DNA from: Diadema antillarum
Lineage: Eukaryota
Direction: 5' to 3'
Length of the DNA stretch: 64,000 bases
Assembly (NCBI RefSeq): GCF_040938485.1
Contig: NW_027271025.1
Span: forward strand, 558,001 to 622,000
Below are positions 35,329 to 41,037 of this stretch, one piece after another. Position 1 is the first letter of the stretch; each line of letters begins with the position of its first letter. A program made the position numbers and the translations under genes. The notes under the pieces were generated by a model. That model was not told where the DNA came from and made no database searches. It worked only from the letters and a program-made list of their open reading frames with translations.

Positions 35329-38300
35329 CTAACTCTGTTGGATGTTGTAAAGTTTCAATAAAAATGGTTTTAATTTATTCTTAAAGAAATTCAGAGATTG
35401 AGCAGTAGTAATGTTACTGGGAAGTGAATTCCAGTACTTTGGCCCGTCGTAAATAAATGTGTTTTGAGCCAACAAAGTTCTCAGAAATGGCAAATGGAAA
35501 TCATTTGATCGCCGTGTTGGATAATTATGAATGGATTGATTTCTTTGAAACATTGTTTCAAATATATTTGGGAGATTATTTTTATTATAATTATACATAA
35601 ATTGTCCTAGATTAAACAAATACAAATCATTAATTTTCAATATTTTATGCTCATAAAATAGTGGGTCAGTATGGGACAAAAATGCAGTATGACATATAAC
35701 ACGGAGTGATTTCTTTTGCAATAAAAGTAATTTATCTAAGAATGTTTTATATGTATTTCCCCACGCGAGAATACCGTAACTTAAATGTGGCAATATTAAG
35801 GATGAATATAATACGAGCAGGGACGACAAAGGAAAACAAAACTTAAGCTTATTAATTATACCAATATTACGTGAAATAATTTTACATATACTGTCAATAT
35901 GAAATTTCCAGGACAGCTTATTGTCAACTGTTACTCCAAGAAATTTTATATGGGAGACATTTTCGAGTGGAGTACCATCTAAAACAATATCAACAGGTAA
36001 TGCCTCAGTAGAATTACTAAAGAGCATATATTTTGTTTTTTGAAGGTTAAGAGATAGCTTATTTGCTTTTATCCACTGGGCAACATTTTCTAATTCTAAA
36101 TTTATTGTATTAACAAGGGTAAAAAGATTATTGTGTGAAAAAAATAGATTTGAGTCGTCTGCAAAAAGAATAAAAGAAAGAACATCTGATGATCTACAAA
36201 AATCATTTATGTAAACAGTAAACAACAGTGGACCTAATAAACTTCCCTGTGGCACCCCACATTTAATATTTAATATTTGTGAATTACAACCATTTAAAGA
36301 AACATATTGTTTCCTGTTCATGAGGTAGCTCCTGAACCACTCCAAGGCCTTCCCACGAACTCCATAATGGTGTAATTTGTTAAGTAAAATATCATGATTG
36401 ATGGTGTCGAAGGCCTTGGAGAAGTCCAGGAACAAACCTATCAAATGAGAAGATTTATCGATAGCATGTGCCACTTTTTCTATAAAACTCAATAATGCAT
36501 GTGTGGTGCTATGTTTCTCCCTAAATCCAAATTGAGAATTCGTAAATATATGATTAAATTTAAAGAAATTAATAGTTCTTTTATAAATAATTTTTTCAAG
36601 AATTTTTGACAATGCACTTAACAAAGAAATTGGTCGGTAATTATTTACATCTAATTTGTCACCTTTTTTAAACAAGGGGATGACTTTTGCTATTTTCATA
36701 CTTTCGGGGAAGGTGCCATTAAAAAGGGATAGATTAAATATATGAGCTAAGGGATCCGCAATTGACGATATTACCCCCTTTAAAAGAAAATTGCTGATGT
36801 CATCGTGTCCAGCACTTTTTTTGGAACTGAAATCAGAGACAATATTAATTATCTCCTGAGTGTATGTTGGATTAAAAAATATTGAACTAGAATTTGGGGG
36901 ACCCAAAAATTCGGAAAAATGTTTTGTGGAGGGAGGAATATTACTTGCCAGGCTTTCCCCAATTGAAGAAAAATGGTTATTCAAAACATCACAAATTTGT
37001 TGAGAATCTTCAAGAATTTCACCATCAAATCTAATTTTTGTAATATTTGACTTAACATTTGATATATTCATGGCTTGCTTTAAAACTTTCCATGTATTTT
37101 GCATATCATGCCTGTAAAATTGTAACTGATTAGTATAATATTTTTTCTTTTCTATTCGTATAATTTTCGTCAAAGTATTTTTATAACTAGTGTATTTCAA
37201 CTTTGATTGCTCAGTACGTTTCATTTTAAATCTGTAATATAAATTATTCTTTCTATTTATTGAACGCAGGAGCGATTTTGAAATCCATGGGAGCCTGGGT
37301 ATTTTTTTTTGTAATTAGCTGATTTTTCTCTACGTTTTGGAATACAAATGTCCAAATGTTGGATAAAAATCTTCATAAAATATTCATAAGACAAATTAAC
37401 ATCATCTGTATCAAAGATACAGGACCAGTCTGCGGTGTCTAAGCTAGCACCTAGCCTGGCTATACTTTCATGAGTAATTCTTCGTTTAAATATATTGTTG
37501 TTTTTATTATTAACTGTTCCATTTAAAGAAAAACCAGTCGAGATGGGGAAATGATCGGTGATATCTGAGAGTACTATAAAAGAATCAGGAGGAGGAAGAA
37601 TGTTACAAAAAATGTTATCAATTAAAGAAACAGATTCATTAACTATACGTGTGGGTTTAGATATTAAGGGTAAAAAAGAGGCAGACAAAAATATTTCCAA
37701 AAAATCTTGCGACATATTATTCTGTTTTAGCAAATCTATATTAAAATCACCCATTATAAAACAATTTTTGTTGATAAAAAGTGGGTTTTTAACCAGATCC
37801 GAAAAATAATCTAAAAATGATTTAGTATTCGCGTTTGGTGGTCTATATACTACACCTATGATTATATTTTTGCTGCCTGGAACTGTGATTTCAATAAATA
37901 AAGACTCAAAAAAATCAGTCATACTGGTGAACTCATCGCGGACTACATAATCATAATTTTGTTTAACATATATGGCAACGCCTCCACCTACCCTATTTTG
38001 TCTGTTATTAACCACTAAATCGTACCCGTCGAGAGCGAAGGGAAGACTGGAGTCATGAGAGAGCCAGGTTTCGGTTAAACCTACCGCCGAGATATTATGC
38101 ATGATGGGACTATTTAAAAATAACCTCAATTCTTCAAAATGCTTATTAATACTTCTAATATTAAAATGTAAAAGAGAAAAAGTAGTACTATCATATTCCT
38201 TGACAACATTGGTAAATTGGGATTGAGTAAGATATTCAGAAGACGGACTTTGCAATTGGTTCTCTGTGTCAAAATCATAGTCTAATTCTTGCGGCGATGA

Positions 38301-38534
38301 ATTAAAACTGTCAGAAACATAATTATCAAAAAAAATGTCATTTTGATTGATATTTGATTCGTTTTGTTCAAAAGAAGGTCCTGCCAAATCAAAAAAGTCA
38401 TCATCATTAATTGAATTGAATGCTGTGTCTATAGAATTGCGTATGAAAGGGTGAGCGTGTTGTCCGTTGCTTGAGTCCACGAGGGCACCTGTAGAGGGCA
38501 GTATAGAACAATTTGACTGTGGAGATTGTTGCAA
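35329..38534 (-). pseudogene. LINE A ORF2 (APE endonuclease and RT), one frameshift at an A9 run (37302-37310)
   Basis: APE motifs NIRS, ETWL, GDFN, IDNI, DHFP. RT motifs GVPQGSLLGP and FADD. Correcting the A-run gives NYKK(K)IPRLPWISKSLLRSINRKN, which matches LINE B. Confidence 0.9.
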
Positions 38535-38884
38535 TATTGCAGTTACACATTTTATCGTTGTCTCTTAATATAACGTTGTCTACAAAGGAAAATAGGATCG
38601 TCCTATACATAACATTAATACGATCTAAGTAGGCACAAACATAAAGAGAACAGTTTGTCATAAGCATGAATACTGATATTCAAAATAGCATTCTTTTACT
38701 CTGATAAAGACACATCGACCGCTATTTTGTATTTTTTGGGTATTATATCCAAGCTGGACATTCTCTATTATTATAATATATTCTTATATTTTAAGTATTT
38801 TGCATCGAGAAATACGAAAATAAAATTGAAGTCCTTATACGTATTATGATTGAAGTCCTTATTATGTGATTGCTTTCCGTGCTT

Positions 38885-38941
38885 GTCATTTTGCCTCTGA
38901 CGAAGATTCTGCTAGGATCGAAAGCTCAGGCCCCTTTTGAC
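38885..38941 (+). ncRNA. Minimal type I hammerhead ribozyme, copy 1
   Basis: Stem I GCCU/AGGC (extended by GUCA/UGAC), core CUGACGA, stem II GAUUC/GGAUC, GAAA, palindromic AGCU in place of stem III, predicted cleavage after C38927. Confidence 0.75.
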
Positions 38942-39198
38942 TCCATTTTACTCCATTGGCTCGCCTTTATTGGATAGGCAGTTTTCAGCAGTTTTTTTGC
39001 CACATTTAGTTCATTTTCTGCTGTTGCATCACGCCCACGTGATCCTCCTTATCCTCTTTGTCTTCTCTGTTCTGTTTTAATTGTTTTAACTGTTTTATTG
39101 CTTTGTTCCAGTTCAGTCTCCTTCCTAGCCCTCTTTCACTCCCACTTCTGTTCCTGTTGTGTGAAGTCCTTATATGTGATTGCTTTCCCTGCTTGTTT

Positions 39199-39255
39199 GT
39201 CATTTTGCCTCTGACGAAGATTCTGCTAGGATCGAAAGCTCAGGCCCCTTTTGAC
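39199..39255 (+). ncRNA. Minimal type I hammerhead ribozyme, copy 2
   Basis: Identical motif; predicted cleavage after C39241. Confidence 0.75.
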
Positions 39256-39274
39256 TCCAAAATAGAATTGATAT

Positions 39275-39640
39275 TGAAATTGAATTGTCACCTGAAGCCA
39301 GGAACTGCGCCGTGATGGCCAGCTTAAAGCCCGGAGTTAGTGCGTTCCTCATCTATTATTCCTGCTTCTGTATCCTTGGCCCCACTCATCGAACATAACA
39401 GGCTCCATCCTGAAGTTTTTAAAGAAGGGCTTAGGATTTCAACTCTAAGCTTCTCCGTTAGCCTGGGATAATGTCTCTACAGCCTCCTGCTCTCCTCTGG
39501 CGGCCATGGTTGAGTGCGATATTTTCAGGGTCTTCTCCATCTGTTCCTTCTCTTTGCCTTCTCTACGTCTCTCTATCAAGTAGGTCGTGCTCAGGACAGC
39601 AATCTGCAGCAAAGCAACATGGTCCAAACGGTCCATACTC
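39275..39640 (-). pseudogene. PIF/Harbinger transposase N-terminal relic
   Basis: Across stops and frameshifts: FFKNFRMEPVMFDE / VGPRIQKQE**MRNALTPGFKLAITAQFLASGD, which resembles the Harbinger helix-turn-helix region. A possible terminus lies near 40210-40222. Confidence 0.7.
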
Positions 39641-40280
39641 TATCATGGCTGGGCTGAGACTCATGAAAATGCTCGATTCACCAGTACTTGAAACCTTATC
39701 GCAGACCATTCCGGCGGGATTCTTGATGCACATCATGGAATATTCGTTTTACATTATGAGTACATTCTAAATATTCGCGTTGCATTCTGTTTGAATTCTT
39801 GAACATTCAAATCATGTTTATTAGCTATTCCCGGAGCCTTTTGACTGCATTCGAGATAAATTTGTACAATGTACTTCATTCGGGACGCTTTCAGACCTGC
39901 TAACCAGACTTCGAGCAGCTACAATCGGTCGGCATTCGTACGGCATTCGAAGTGCTTTTGAAATATTCTGACTGCATTTTAATAGCATTCTTAATATTCC
40001 TATTGTGTTCCAACTACATTCGAACCACACTCGAGAGCTAAACGGAATATCACATTAGAATGATTCGATACAAAGCTGTTCCAAGTATTAGAACAACAAT
40101 TCTCAACAAACTGTAGGAATTTTAAATTCTTTCCCGAATGTGGCACGAATTTTGAAAATCTTTCATTCGAGTCACTTCTGCTTGATTCGTGCTATATATA
40201 ATACTATTCTGTGACGGGGATATAAGAATGACTGTTCACAGCTATGTCACTGATGCAGGCTGTTGTTGCAGCAATGTTAT

Positions 40281-40560
40281 TGAATTGAATTGAATTGAAT
40301 TGAATTTATTTATTCAGCATAAAAACAACAGAGAAAGACATTGATGAACAGTCATGACAGACACAGAGAAAAAAAAACATAACTTTATAAAGCTGAAGGG
40401 AAGCAGCCAACGAGGAATTAAGTTTCCTTAAAATCTGGCCGACCCAGAAAATCAATTTAAAAAAATGCATGGGTGGTAAATTATTTCATATTTATAAAAA
40501 AAAAAATGAGATGAACACATATACCGATGCAAGAACAAAACATAAAGCAATACAGCATGA
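40281..40560 (-). mobile_element. 3' end fragment of a LINE
   Basis: Minus strand AATAAATAAA followed by (TTCAA)n, the same tail architecture as LINE A and B. The upper boundary is approximate. Confidence 0.45.
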
Positions 40561-40606
40561 TACACACTACATTTACATTCTGAAGACAATACGACGAAAG
40601 TGAGTT

Positions 40607-41037
40607 ACACGGATAGTGTATTGACGTGTATTTCATCTCAGTTTACTTAATTATTTGGTTATCCCTCATGTTGGGCGACAAAATAGGCGGTTGCTATACA
40701 CAGGCGTTTTAGTTCATAAGCTGGTCGTGGGGAAATTATCTGTGGTCGTTAAATATAGACAGGTGGTAATATAAGACAAGATTGACTGTATTAGACACGG
40801 ACAGTGTATTGACTTGTATTTCATCTCAGTTTACTTAATTAGTTTGGTTATCCCTCATGTTGGGCGACAAAATAGGCGGTTGCTATACACAGGCGTTTTA
40901 GTTCATAAGTTGGTTGTGGGGAAATTATCTGTGGTCGTTAAATATAGACAGTGGTAATATAAGACAGGATTGACTGTATTAGACACGGACAGTGTATTGA
41001 CTTGTATTTCATCTCAGTTTGCTTAATTATTTGGTTA
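40607..41037. repeat. 188-bp tandem repeat, about 2.3 copies
   Basis: gtgtattgac...catctcagttt recurs at 40616, 40804 and 40992. Confidence 0.85.

What the first reader, a model, noticed from the sequence alone, without database searches (positions are those of the whole stretch)
38885..39255. Paired minimal hammerhead ribozymes 314 nt apart: dimer-activated self-cleaving unit and possible circular RNA
Seen: two identical motifs GCCU-CUGACGA-A-GAUUC(UGCUA)GGAUC-GAA-AGCU-C/AGGC with an outer GUCA/UGAC helix. Stem III is replaced by the palindrome AGCU. Established: Penelope-like elements and metazoan retrozymes carry such minimal type I hammerheads, which cleave efficiently as dimers through the palindromic loop 3, and tandem copies release monomers that can circularise. 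Inference: a plus-strand transcript would be cut after 38927 and 39241, releasing a 314-nt non-coding RNA. No Penelope RT or GIY-YIG ORF is nearby, so this is either a truncated insertion or a non-autonomous retrozyme family. The extra A after CUGACGA departs from the canonical core.
Basis: partly seen in the sequence, partly recalled or inferred. Interest (0 to 1): 0.75.

Follow-up and report, generated by a model that had tools for sequence, protein, structure and literature searches.

The report
Deleted Penelope retrotransposon with hammerhead repeats
The two hammerhead ribozyme motifs are real, but they are the terminal repeats of one internally deleted copy of a Penelope-like retrotransposon that is abundant and young in this animal genome, which is a known arrangement.

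Summary
Two identical 57-nt minimal type I hammerhead motifs lie at 38885-38941 and 39199-39255 (+), 314 nt apart. The predicted cut sites are after 38927 and 39241.

They are not a free-standing retrozyme. The same 31-nt core occurs about 1,170 times in this 1.75-Gb genome. [quoted passage not shown] That is a Penelope-like element (PLE) with the ribozyme in its pseudo-LTRs, as described by Cervera & de la Peña (2014).

The window holds a 433-bp copy (38827-39259) that has lost about 3.8 kb between the 5'UTR and the last ~50 nt of the 3'UTR. The deletion junction at 39149/39150 is found only here and in a near-identical second contig. A scan for same-strand core pairs with 0-371 nt between them found no dispersed short family.

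The "extra A" is the bulged nucleotide typical of PLE hammerheads, not an anomaly. Self-cleavage, transcription and a 314-nt circle remain untested, because only assembled contigs were available, not raw RNA reads.

Verdict: an ordinary new member of a known kind, of low interest.

The parts
38827..39259 (+). Whole PLE-derived insertion (433 bp). It is a partial tandem: 3'UTR end + HHR, then a 5'UTR segment, then 3'UTR end + HHR + 18-nt tail.
   Evidence: Alignment with full-length elements L061 and L062. The 3' end GACTCCA| is shared with about 15 other copies.
38818..38826 (.). Putative target-site duplication, left copy (AAATAAAAT)
   Evidence: Read. It matches 39260-39268 at 8 of 9 positions. 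The context is AT-rich, so this is only suggestive.
39260..39268 (.). Putative target-site duplication, right copy (AAATAGAAT)
   Evidence: Read.
38827..38884 (+). End of the PLE 3'UTR from the upstream, 5'-truncated unit. It carries a local 24-nt duplication (38825-38848 and 38849-38866).
   Evidence: (families D3 and D5).
38885..38941 (+). Hammerhead motif 1. Core 38897-38927; predicted cleavage after C 38927.
38942..39149 (+). First ~208 nt of the PLE 5'UTR. It is 92-97% identical to the same part of full-length copies.
39149..39150 (+). Internal deletion junction (5'UTR joined to the last ~49 nt of the 3'UTR, with TCT microhomology). About 3.8 kb, including the RT/GIY-YIG ORF, is missing.
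   Evidence: The junction 31-mer occurs only at C137 and C447.
39150..39198 (+). Last ~49 nt of the PLE 3'UTR
39199..39255 (+). Hammerhead motif 2. Core 39211-39241; predicted cleavage after C 39241.
39256..39259 (+). Terminal TCCA. This is the common 3' terminus of insertions of this family, 18 nt past the cleavage site.
   Evidence: Contig ends in run X22 cluster at 39259/39260 (table 7).

Best explanation
The locus is a single, internally deleted copy of a young Penelope-like retrotransposon. The two hammerhead motifs are that element's pseudo-LTR ribozymes.

Shown:
- Full-length units in this genome are about 4.1 kb. They read HHR, ~500-nt 5'UTR, 908-911-aa RT + GIY-YIG ORF, ~840-nt 3'UTR, HHR.
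- The window copy keeps the end of an upstream unit (3'UTR end + HHR), the first ~208 nt of the 5'UTR, and then jumps to the last ~49 nt of the 3'UTR + HHR + 18 nt.
- The junction is single-locus.

Inferred:
- The ~3.8-kb loss arose either by template switching of the reverse transcriptase at TCT microhomology during insertion, or by a later genomic deletion.
- In the parent element, the hammerhead has a 1-bp helix III and the palindrome AGCU. It is built to pair with a second copy as a double hammerhead and to cut tandem or read-through PLE transcripts, probably slowly and with protein help.
- The relic has no coding capacity and no shown promoter, so it is most likely inert DNA. If it were transcribed through, its two intact motifs could in principle release a 314-nt RNA.
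For: - Motif and spacing.
- Copy number: 587 + 582 genomic core matches against 0 for the reversed control, with many same-strand pairs about 4.1 kb apart.
- Full-length loci L061 and L062 have the core at both ends of a 911/908-aa ORF. The ORF hits RVT_1 at 3e-10 and 5e-11, and GIY-YIG at about 1e-3.
- The motif VVY...YVGET is visible in the ORF's C-terminus.
- The nearest Atlas clusters carry HTH_animal + DUF8422 + RVT_1 + GIY-YIG.
- The alignment shows 5'UTR up to 39149, then the 3'UTR end.
- The junction occurs only at C137 and C447. The C447 flanks are identical over 2.8 kb apart from one mismatch.
- The gap scan shows the 314-nt arrangement is unique.
- At least 20 ORF copies are about 99-100% identical to the query ORF and carry no stops over the RT-EN segment searched; about 15 have full ~910-aa open frames.
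- The HHR is about 4-fold less substituted than the adjacent UTR: 13/988 against 224/3898.
- PLE hallmarks appear in other copies: inverted HHR fragments abutting the 5' end, and discrete 3' termini.
- Literature: PMC4209133, PMC8557442, PMC11167929.
Against: - No Rfam hit.
- The GIY-YIG Pfam score is below the curated cut-off (19.9 against 22.6 bits).
- There are no compensatory double changes in the helices among copies, only a few wobble-preserving C-to-U changes. The copies are too alike for a covariation test.
- There is no evidence of transcription or cleavage. All runs were assembled contigs, and none bridges the 39149 junction.
- The TSD is 8 of 9 in AT-rich DNA and could be chance.
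- No empty site was found.
Confidence: 0.88

Rival explanations
1. Non-autonomous non-LTR retrozyme. The 314-nt unit would be a member of a mobile family that is transcribed, self-cleaved at both hammerheads, circularised and copied back by PLE machinery.
For: - Two intact same-strand type I HHRs lie 314 nt apart, within the published size range of metazoan retrozymes (PMC7229834).
- Retrozymes are reported to derive from PLE pLTRs (bioRxiv 10.64898/2026.07.22.740005).
- An apparently active helper family is present.
- The whole unit may be TSD-flanked.
Against: - The junction 31-mer and the 279-309-nt gap class occur only at this locus and its twin contig.
- No other same-strand core pairs exist for gaps of 0-371 nt, except two tight pairs and one ~130-nt local array with a different spacer.
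- There are only 1.4 units, not an array.
- No RNA evidence was obtained.
Confidence: 0.06
2. The motifs are sequence look-alikes without catalytic competence. The conserved block in the pLTR would serve another role, for example protein binding or reverse-transcription initiation, and never cleave.
For: - PLE min-HHRs cleave poorly in vitro (PMC4209133).
- HHR mutants did not affect insertion in vitro, and no RNA-seq ends were seen at the cut site for the Anolis element (PMC11167929).
- Here, nearly all insertion 3' ends lie 18 or about 90 nt past the cut site. The templates were therefore uncut at that HHR.
- PLE clades without HHRs proliferate well (PMC8557442).
Against: - All 11 core nucleotides, G10.1-C11.1, the bulge, H17 = C and the palindromic helix III are present.
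- The variable positions among copies are N7 and the bulge, exactly those the hammerhead tolerates.
- Related PLE HHRs do cleave as dimers or with protein (PMC4209133, PMC11167929).
Confidence: 0.1
3. Chance occurrence of hammerhead-like strings inside an unrelated direct repeat.
For: There is no Rfam hit, and the fold is no more stable than shuffles.
Against: - The descriptor gives 0 hits in 20 shuffled windows.
- The reversed-pattern control gives 0 against 1,169.
- The motif sits in the pLTRs of RT + GIY-YIG elements, as published for PLEs.
Confidence: 0.01

Closest known systems
Minimal hammerhead ribozymes in the pseudo-LTRs of metazoan Penelope-like elements (Cervera & de la Peña 2014, PMC4209133; Lünse, Weinberg & Breaker 2016, cited in PMC6765202 and not held in the library)
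   Same: - Type I topology and a short helix I.
- Helix II longer than the canonical 4 bp (5-6 bp here).
- An unpaired nucleotide between A9 and G10.1, and a G10.1-C11.1 pair.
- Helix III reduced to a palindrome (AGCU).
- Location in both flanking repeats of an RT + GIY-YIG element.
- Most genomic motifs are solitary or in truncated copies, and inverted pairs lie 60-1,600 nt apart.
   Different: - This is a family-specific sequence in what is probably an echinoderm genome.
- The motifs are very uniform, like the D. virilis case of a recent invasion, rather than heterogeneous as in most metazoans.
- The window copy lacks the ORF through internal deletion.
Metazoan non-LTR retrozymes (Cervera & de la Peña 2020, PMC7229834; Li, Clavereau & Pollet 2026 preprint)
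   Same: Same-strand type I HHRs lie a few hundred nt apart, the spacer is non-coding with low GC, there is sequence kinship to PLE pLTRs, and a TSD longer than 4 bp is possible.
   Different: This is a single locus with 1.4 units, not a multicopy tandem family. No circRNA evidence was obtained. The spacer is plainly PLE 5'UTR plus 3'UTR joined by a deletion.
Poseidon element PAc of Anolis carolinensis (Frangieh et al. 2024, PMC11167929)
   Same: - The domain order is N-terminal nucleic-acid-binding region, then RT, then C-terminal GIY-YIG.
- Organisation is tandem or partial-tandem.
- Insertions end at discrete sites downstream of the HHR cut site, which fits internal initiation of reverse transcription on uncleaved RNA.
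- The target is AT-rich.
   Different: In PAc the ORF starts inside the HHR, whereas here the ORF starts about 500 nt downstream. Initiation sites and protein dependence were not tested here.
Double-hammerhead satellites (newt satellite 2, ASBVd; Forster et al. 1988, as cited in PMC4209133)
   Same: An unstable helix III with a palindromic loop, predicted to be active only when two copies pair.
   Different: Those have a 2-3-bp helix III with a loop and documented dimer cleavage. Here helix III is 1 bp with a 2-nt loop, or none, and activity is unknown.

Membership tests
Hammerhead ribozyme, type I minimal (PLE) variant | Core nucleotides C3 U4 G5 A6 N7 G8 A9, G12 A13 A14, A15.1-U16.1 and H17 (not G) | tested here: met
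   The core reads CUGACGA ... GAA-A..U-C in both copies.
Hammerhead ribozyme, type I minimal (PLE) variant | Helices I and II base-paired, with a G10.1-C11.1 closing pair and an open helix I | tested here: met
   Helix I is GCCU/AGGC plus the outer GUCA/UGAC. Helix II is GAUUCU/AGGAUC. The MFE fold reproduces both.
Hammerhead ribozyme, type I minimal (PLE) variant | An unpaired nucleotide between A9 and G10.1, and a palindromic 15.x-16.x segment in place of a stable helix III | tested here: met
   The extra A (C in a few copies) and AGCU are both present. The criteria are from PMC4209133.
Hammerhead ribozyme, type I minimal (PLE) variant | Covariation supporting the helices | tested here: inconclusive
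   The copies are nearly identical. Only wobble-preserving C-to-U changes occur in helix I, and older copies simply decay.
Hammerhead ribozyme, type I minimal (PLE) variant | Match to a curated Rfam hammerhead model | tested here: not met
   No hit at the gathering score or at E <= 10. No family model supports the call, which therefore rests on the motif descriptor and the pLTR context. I assume, but did not test, that the 1-bp helix III and the bulged nucleotide cost the score.
Hammerhead ribozyme, type I minimal (PLE) variant | Site-specific self-cleavage after H17 | not testable with these tools
   Only assembled contigs were available, with no read ends.
Penelope-like element (EN+, C-terminal GIY-YIG) | A single ORF with a reverse transcriptase followed by a GIY-YIG endonuclease | tested here: met
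   This holds for the full-length relatives L061 and L062: RVT_1 at 3e-10, and GIY-YIG at 9e-4, which is below Pfam's cut-off. The VVY...YVGET motif is visible. Atlas neighbours share the architecture. The window copy itself has no ORF.
Penelope-like element (EN+, C-terminal GIY-YIG) | Partial-tandem structure giving pseudo-LTRs with the HHR, plus inverted 5'-truncated copies or tails | tested here: met
   Same-strand core pairs lie about 4.1 kb apart. Inverted cores lie 61-122 nt apart, and inverted HHR fragments abut copies in L033, L036 and L051.
Metazoan non-LTR retrozyme | A multicopy family of short (about 170-400 nt) tandem units, each with a type I HHR | tested here: not met
   The junction and spacing occur at one locus only. 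The other gap classes are empty or local.
Metazoan non-LTR retrozyme | Accumulation of unit-length circular RNA | not testable with these tools
   No raw RNA reads of this organism were on offer.

The most novel reading that the evidence does not exclude
The 433-bp, possibly TSD-flanked copy would be a newborn retrozyme caught at the one-copy stage. In this reading, a template-switch product of an active PLE kept both hammerheads and the 3' initiation site. If transcribed, it would yield a 314-nt self-cleaved and ligated circle that the active PLE family could mobilise. That would show directly how animal retrozymes arise from PLEs.
Probability: 0.05. Interest if true: 0.45.

Novelty: new member of a known kind. 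Interest (0 to 1): 0.18.

Why it matters
The finding adds little new biology. Hammerheads in Penelope pseudo-LTRs, their dimer-prone architecture and their scattering as solo or truncated copies have been published since 2014.

The case is useful in three smaller ways:
- As an annotation lesson: Rfam misses these motifs.
- As a clean example of an internal-deletion derivative that has the layout of a retrozyme. This fits the recent proposal that animal retrozymes derive from PLEs.
- As a pointer to a young, probably active PLE family. Its insertion ends lie beyond the ribozyme cut site, in line with internal initiation of reverse transcription on uncleaved RNA.

Tried and rejected
- Rfam at the gathering score and at E <= 10 gave nothing.
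- Fold stability against shuffles was uninformative (z = -0.35).
- RNAcofold of two 57-mers only swapped the helix II strands and says nothing about a double hammerhead.
- All 24 public runs were Logan contigs with small shares. Four were laid. They hold the PLE family, including two "echinoderm metagenome" RNA-seq libraries, but none crosses the 39149 junction, and contigs cannot show RNA ends or circles. The "goes back" joints in run X22 carry extra letters and reflect other genomic arrangements of copies, not circles.
- I tried to fetch divergent PLE families (45-82% protein identity) to test helix covariation between families. The ~130-nt array at C404/C481 and the tight pairs at C202/C1054 were therefore only counted, not read.
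- No PDB relative of the ORF was found by sequence.
- Lünse et al. 2016 is not held in the library.
- No empty target site was found. The left flank is unique DNA next to a young LINE, and the right flank is an older repeat.
- A majority-rule line over a 287-nt non-coding stretch was used only to count substitutions. No consensus of the element or its ORF was built.

Full report
**1. Observation**

Two identical 57-nt blocks lie at 38885-38941 and 39199-39255. In hammerhead numbering each block reads as follows:
- Helix I, 5' strand: outer GUCA, internal loop UUUU, inner GCCU.
- C3-A9: CUGACGA.
- One unpaired A.
- Helix II: GAUUCU/AGGAUC, with a GCU loop (or 5 bp with a 5-nt loop).
- G12-A14: GAA.
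- AGCU, which is A15.1 and U16.1 around GC.
- C17.
- Helix I, 3' strand: AGGC, loop CCCUUU, outer UGAC.

The predicted scissile bonds are after 38927 and 39241.

The statistical checks were these:
- The 31-nt core matches exactly twice and never in 100 shuffles. The spacing is 314 nt.
- A descriptor I wrote finds only these two sites in the window and none in 20 shuffled windows. It requires the core boxes, a fully paired helix II closed by G-C, a palindromic 15.x-16.x segment, H17 and a 4-bp helix I.
- The MFE fold of the 57-mer is exactly helices I and II.
- Its energy is unremarkable (z = -0.35).
- Rfam 15 has no hit even at E <= 10. No family model supports the call, so it rests on the motif and its context.

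**2. What the motif belongs to**

The core, with N at position 7 and at the bulge, occurs 587 + 582 times in this 1.75-Gb, 2,963-contig genome. The reversed control gives 0. The listed places include many same-strand pairs about 4.1 kb apart, and inverted pairs 61-1,640 nt apart.

I fetched six of the 4.1-kb pairs. In L061 and L062 the cores flank a 911-aa and a 908-aa ORF. The evidence on that ORF is:
- The nuclease motif VVY...(10 aa)...YVGET is visible.
- The nearest ESM Atlas clusters share HTH_animal + DUF8422 + RVT_1 + GIY-YIG.
- There is no PDB relative by sequence.

This is the architecture of EN+ Penelope-like elements, with the hammerhead in the pseudo-LTRs (PMC4209133, PMC8557442).

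The family is young. At least 20 ORF copies are about 99-100% identical to the query ORF and carry no stops over the RT-EN segment searched, and about 15 have full ~910-aa open frames. Two RNA-seq-labelled "echinoderm metagenome" libraries hold pieces of the family. The host is therefore probably an echinoderm, though this is inferred only from those run labels.

**3. Anatomy of the window copy**

I aligned the window to L061 and L062. The segments are:
- 38827-38884: the end of the PLE 3'UTR.
- 38885-38941: the first HHR.
- 38942-39149: the first ~208 nt of the 5'UTR, 92-97% identical to other copies.
- 39150-39198: again the last ~49 nt of the 3'UTR.
- 39199-39255: the second HHR.
- 39259: the end of the element, at GACTCCA|.

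About 3.8 kb, including the whole ORF, is therefore missing. The junction shows TCT microhomology.

The 31-mer spanning the junction occurs only here and on contig C447. The C447 flanks are identical to the window's over 2.8 kb apart from one mismatch. C447 is thus a second haplotype or a duplicated assembly of the same locus.

The insertion is bracketed by AAATAAAAT (38818-38826) and AAATAGAAT (39260-39268). This is a possible 9-bp target-site duplication in AT-rich DNA (read; suggestive only). A 24-nt local duplication sits at the 5' edge.

The neighbours are other repeats:
- A young APE + RT LINE lies on the minus strand. Its ORFs span 35329-38534. Its 5' end is at 38687, because at least 38 copies at 97-99% identity all stop there.
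- An older repeat starts at about 39286.

**4. Is there a retrozyme family?**

I scanned the whole genome for same-strand pairs, using the core's end, a gap, then the core's start, with exact matching. The gap classes together covered 0-371 nt.
- The window's class (279-309) contains only C137 and C447.
- Gaps of 0-30 give two loci, C202 and C1054.
- Classes 93-123, 217-247 and 341-371 pick up one local array of four units with a ~130-nt period at C404:1130649-1131070, and its sister at C481. The array has a different spacer and only 9 hits in all.
- All other classes are empty.

The 314-nt arrangement is therefore not a dispersed non-autonomous family. Exact matching misses decayed copies, so this is a lower bound. 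Even so, an active family would have shown up.

**5. Conservation**

I compared 19 distinct copies selected by overall similarity, not by the core. The 57-nt HHR carries 13 changes in 988 cells (1.3%). The adjacent 5'UTR carries 224 in 3,898 (5.75%). The copies are related, so this is not an independent-sample test.

The changes seen fit hammerhead tolerance. N7 is C, U or G, and the bulge is A or C. Several helix I changes are C to U and keep a G-U pair. The oldest copies (86-88% identity) carry disabling changes, such as C3U or G8A alone, as expected for neutral decay after insertion. No compensatory double changes were seen, so covariation is inconclusive.

**6. How it most likely works**

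From the literature:
- PLE min-HHRs lack a stable helix III and are thought to act as double hammerheads when two copies are on one RNA.
- Their activity in vitro is low even as dimers (PMC4209133, PMC6765202).
- In the one PLE reconstituted in vitro, cleavage needed the element's protein and was dispensable for insertion. Reverse transcription started internally on uncleaved RNA (PMC11167929).

Shown here:
- Insertions of this family end at two discrete sites. About 15 of the copies read end 18 nt past the cut site (GACTCCA|), the window copy among them. About 15 end roughly 90 nt past it, at the T-run followed by GCTAC|.
- Contig ends in run X22 pile up at the same place as the first site (table 7).
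- The templates were therefore not cut at their 3' HHR, which fits internal initiation.

Inferred for the window copy:
- It is an inert relic.
- If read-through transcription occurs, its two intact motifs could pair and release a 314-nt RNA with 5'-OH and 2',3'-cyclic phosphate ends. Nothing here shows that this happens.

**7. Comparison and verdict**

It fails the multicopy criterion of a retrozyme.

It is a new member (family and host) of a known kind. The most novel reading still open is a newborn retrozyme at the one-copy stage, which I put at about 5%.

Confidence in the structural explanation is about 0.88. Catalytic activity in vivo remains unknown.

Noticed in passing
G000:C404:1130649-1131070 and G000:C481:954135-954425 (not fetched): A four-unit (three-unit at C481) tandem array with a period of about 129-138 nt. 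It has the same hammerhead 3' half but a different spacer (AGGTCAATCTTT...). There are two further single units on C404. It is a retrozyme-like mini-array with only 9 hits genome-wide.
   Followed up: partly
loci L009, L030, L039, L040, L048, L053, L054, L058, L059, L062 against L011, L035, L045, L049, L052, L061, L064-L066: Insertions of this PLE family end at two discrete sites, 18 nt and about 90 nt downstream of the predicted ribozyme cut. One copy (L047) ends 2 nt after it. This fits internal initiation of reverse transcription on uncleaved RNA.
   Followed up: partly
G000, many contigs: At least 20 copies of the PLE ORF are about 99-100% identical to the query ORF and have no stops over the RT-EN segment searched, and about 15 have full ~910-aa open frames. 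The family looks recently or currently active. More distant PLE lineages (45-82% protein identity) also exist.
   Followed up: partly
window 35329-38687 (-): A LINE with an APE endonuclease ORF (37257-38534) and an RT ORF (35329-37224). Its 5' end is at 38687. At least 38 other copies at 97-99% identity end at the same base, so this is a very young LINE family.
   Followed up: partly
G000:C447:637916-641316 against window 37360-40760: A second contig repeats this locus almost base for base, with 1 mismatch in 2.8 kb. It is an uncollapsed haplotype or a very recent segmental duplication in the assembly.
   Followed up: partly
L033:1430-1500, L036:1414-1618, L051:1430-1500; G000:C9, C146 and C202 pairs: Inverted hammerhead fragments lie directly upstream of forward copies, 61-122 nt apart. 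This is the inverted 5'-truncated copy or tail signature described for PLEs.
   Followed up: no
window 38825-38866: A 24-nt local tandem duplication (ATTGAAGTCCTTAT...) sits at the 5' edge of the insertion. Its origin is unclear: either 5' end-joining or later slippage.
   Followed up: no
run X22 (organism E) laid on window 38700-39400: More than 2,000 contigs of one run match the hammerhead region at 88-100% identity, and the unique flank matches at about 93%. The same PLE family is highly abundant in a related organism or a divergent individual.
   Followed up: no
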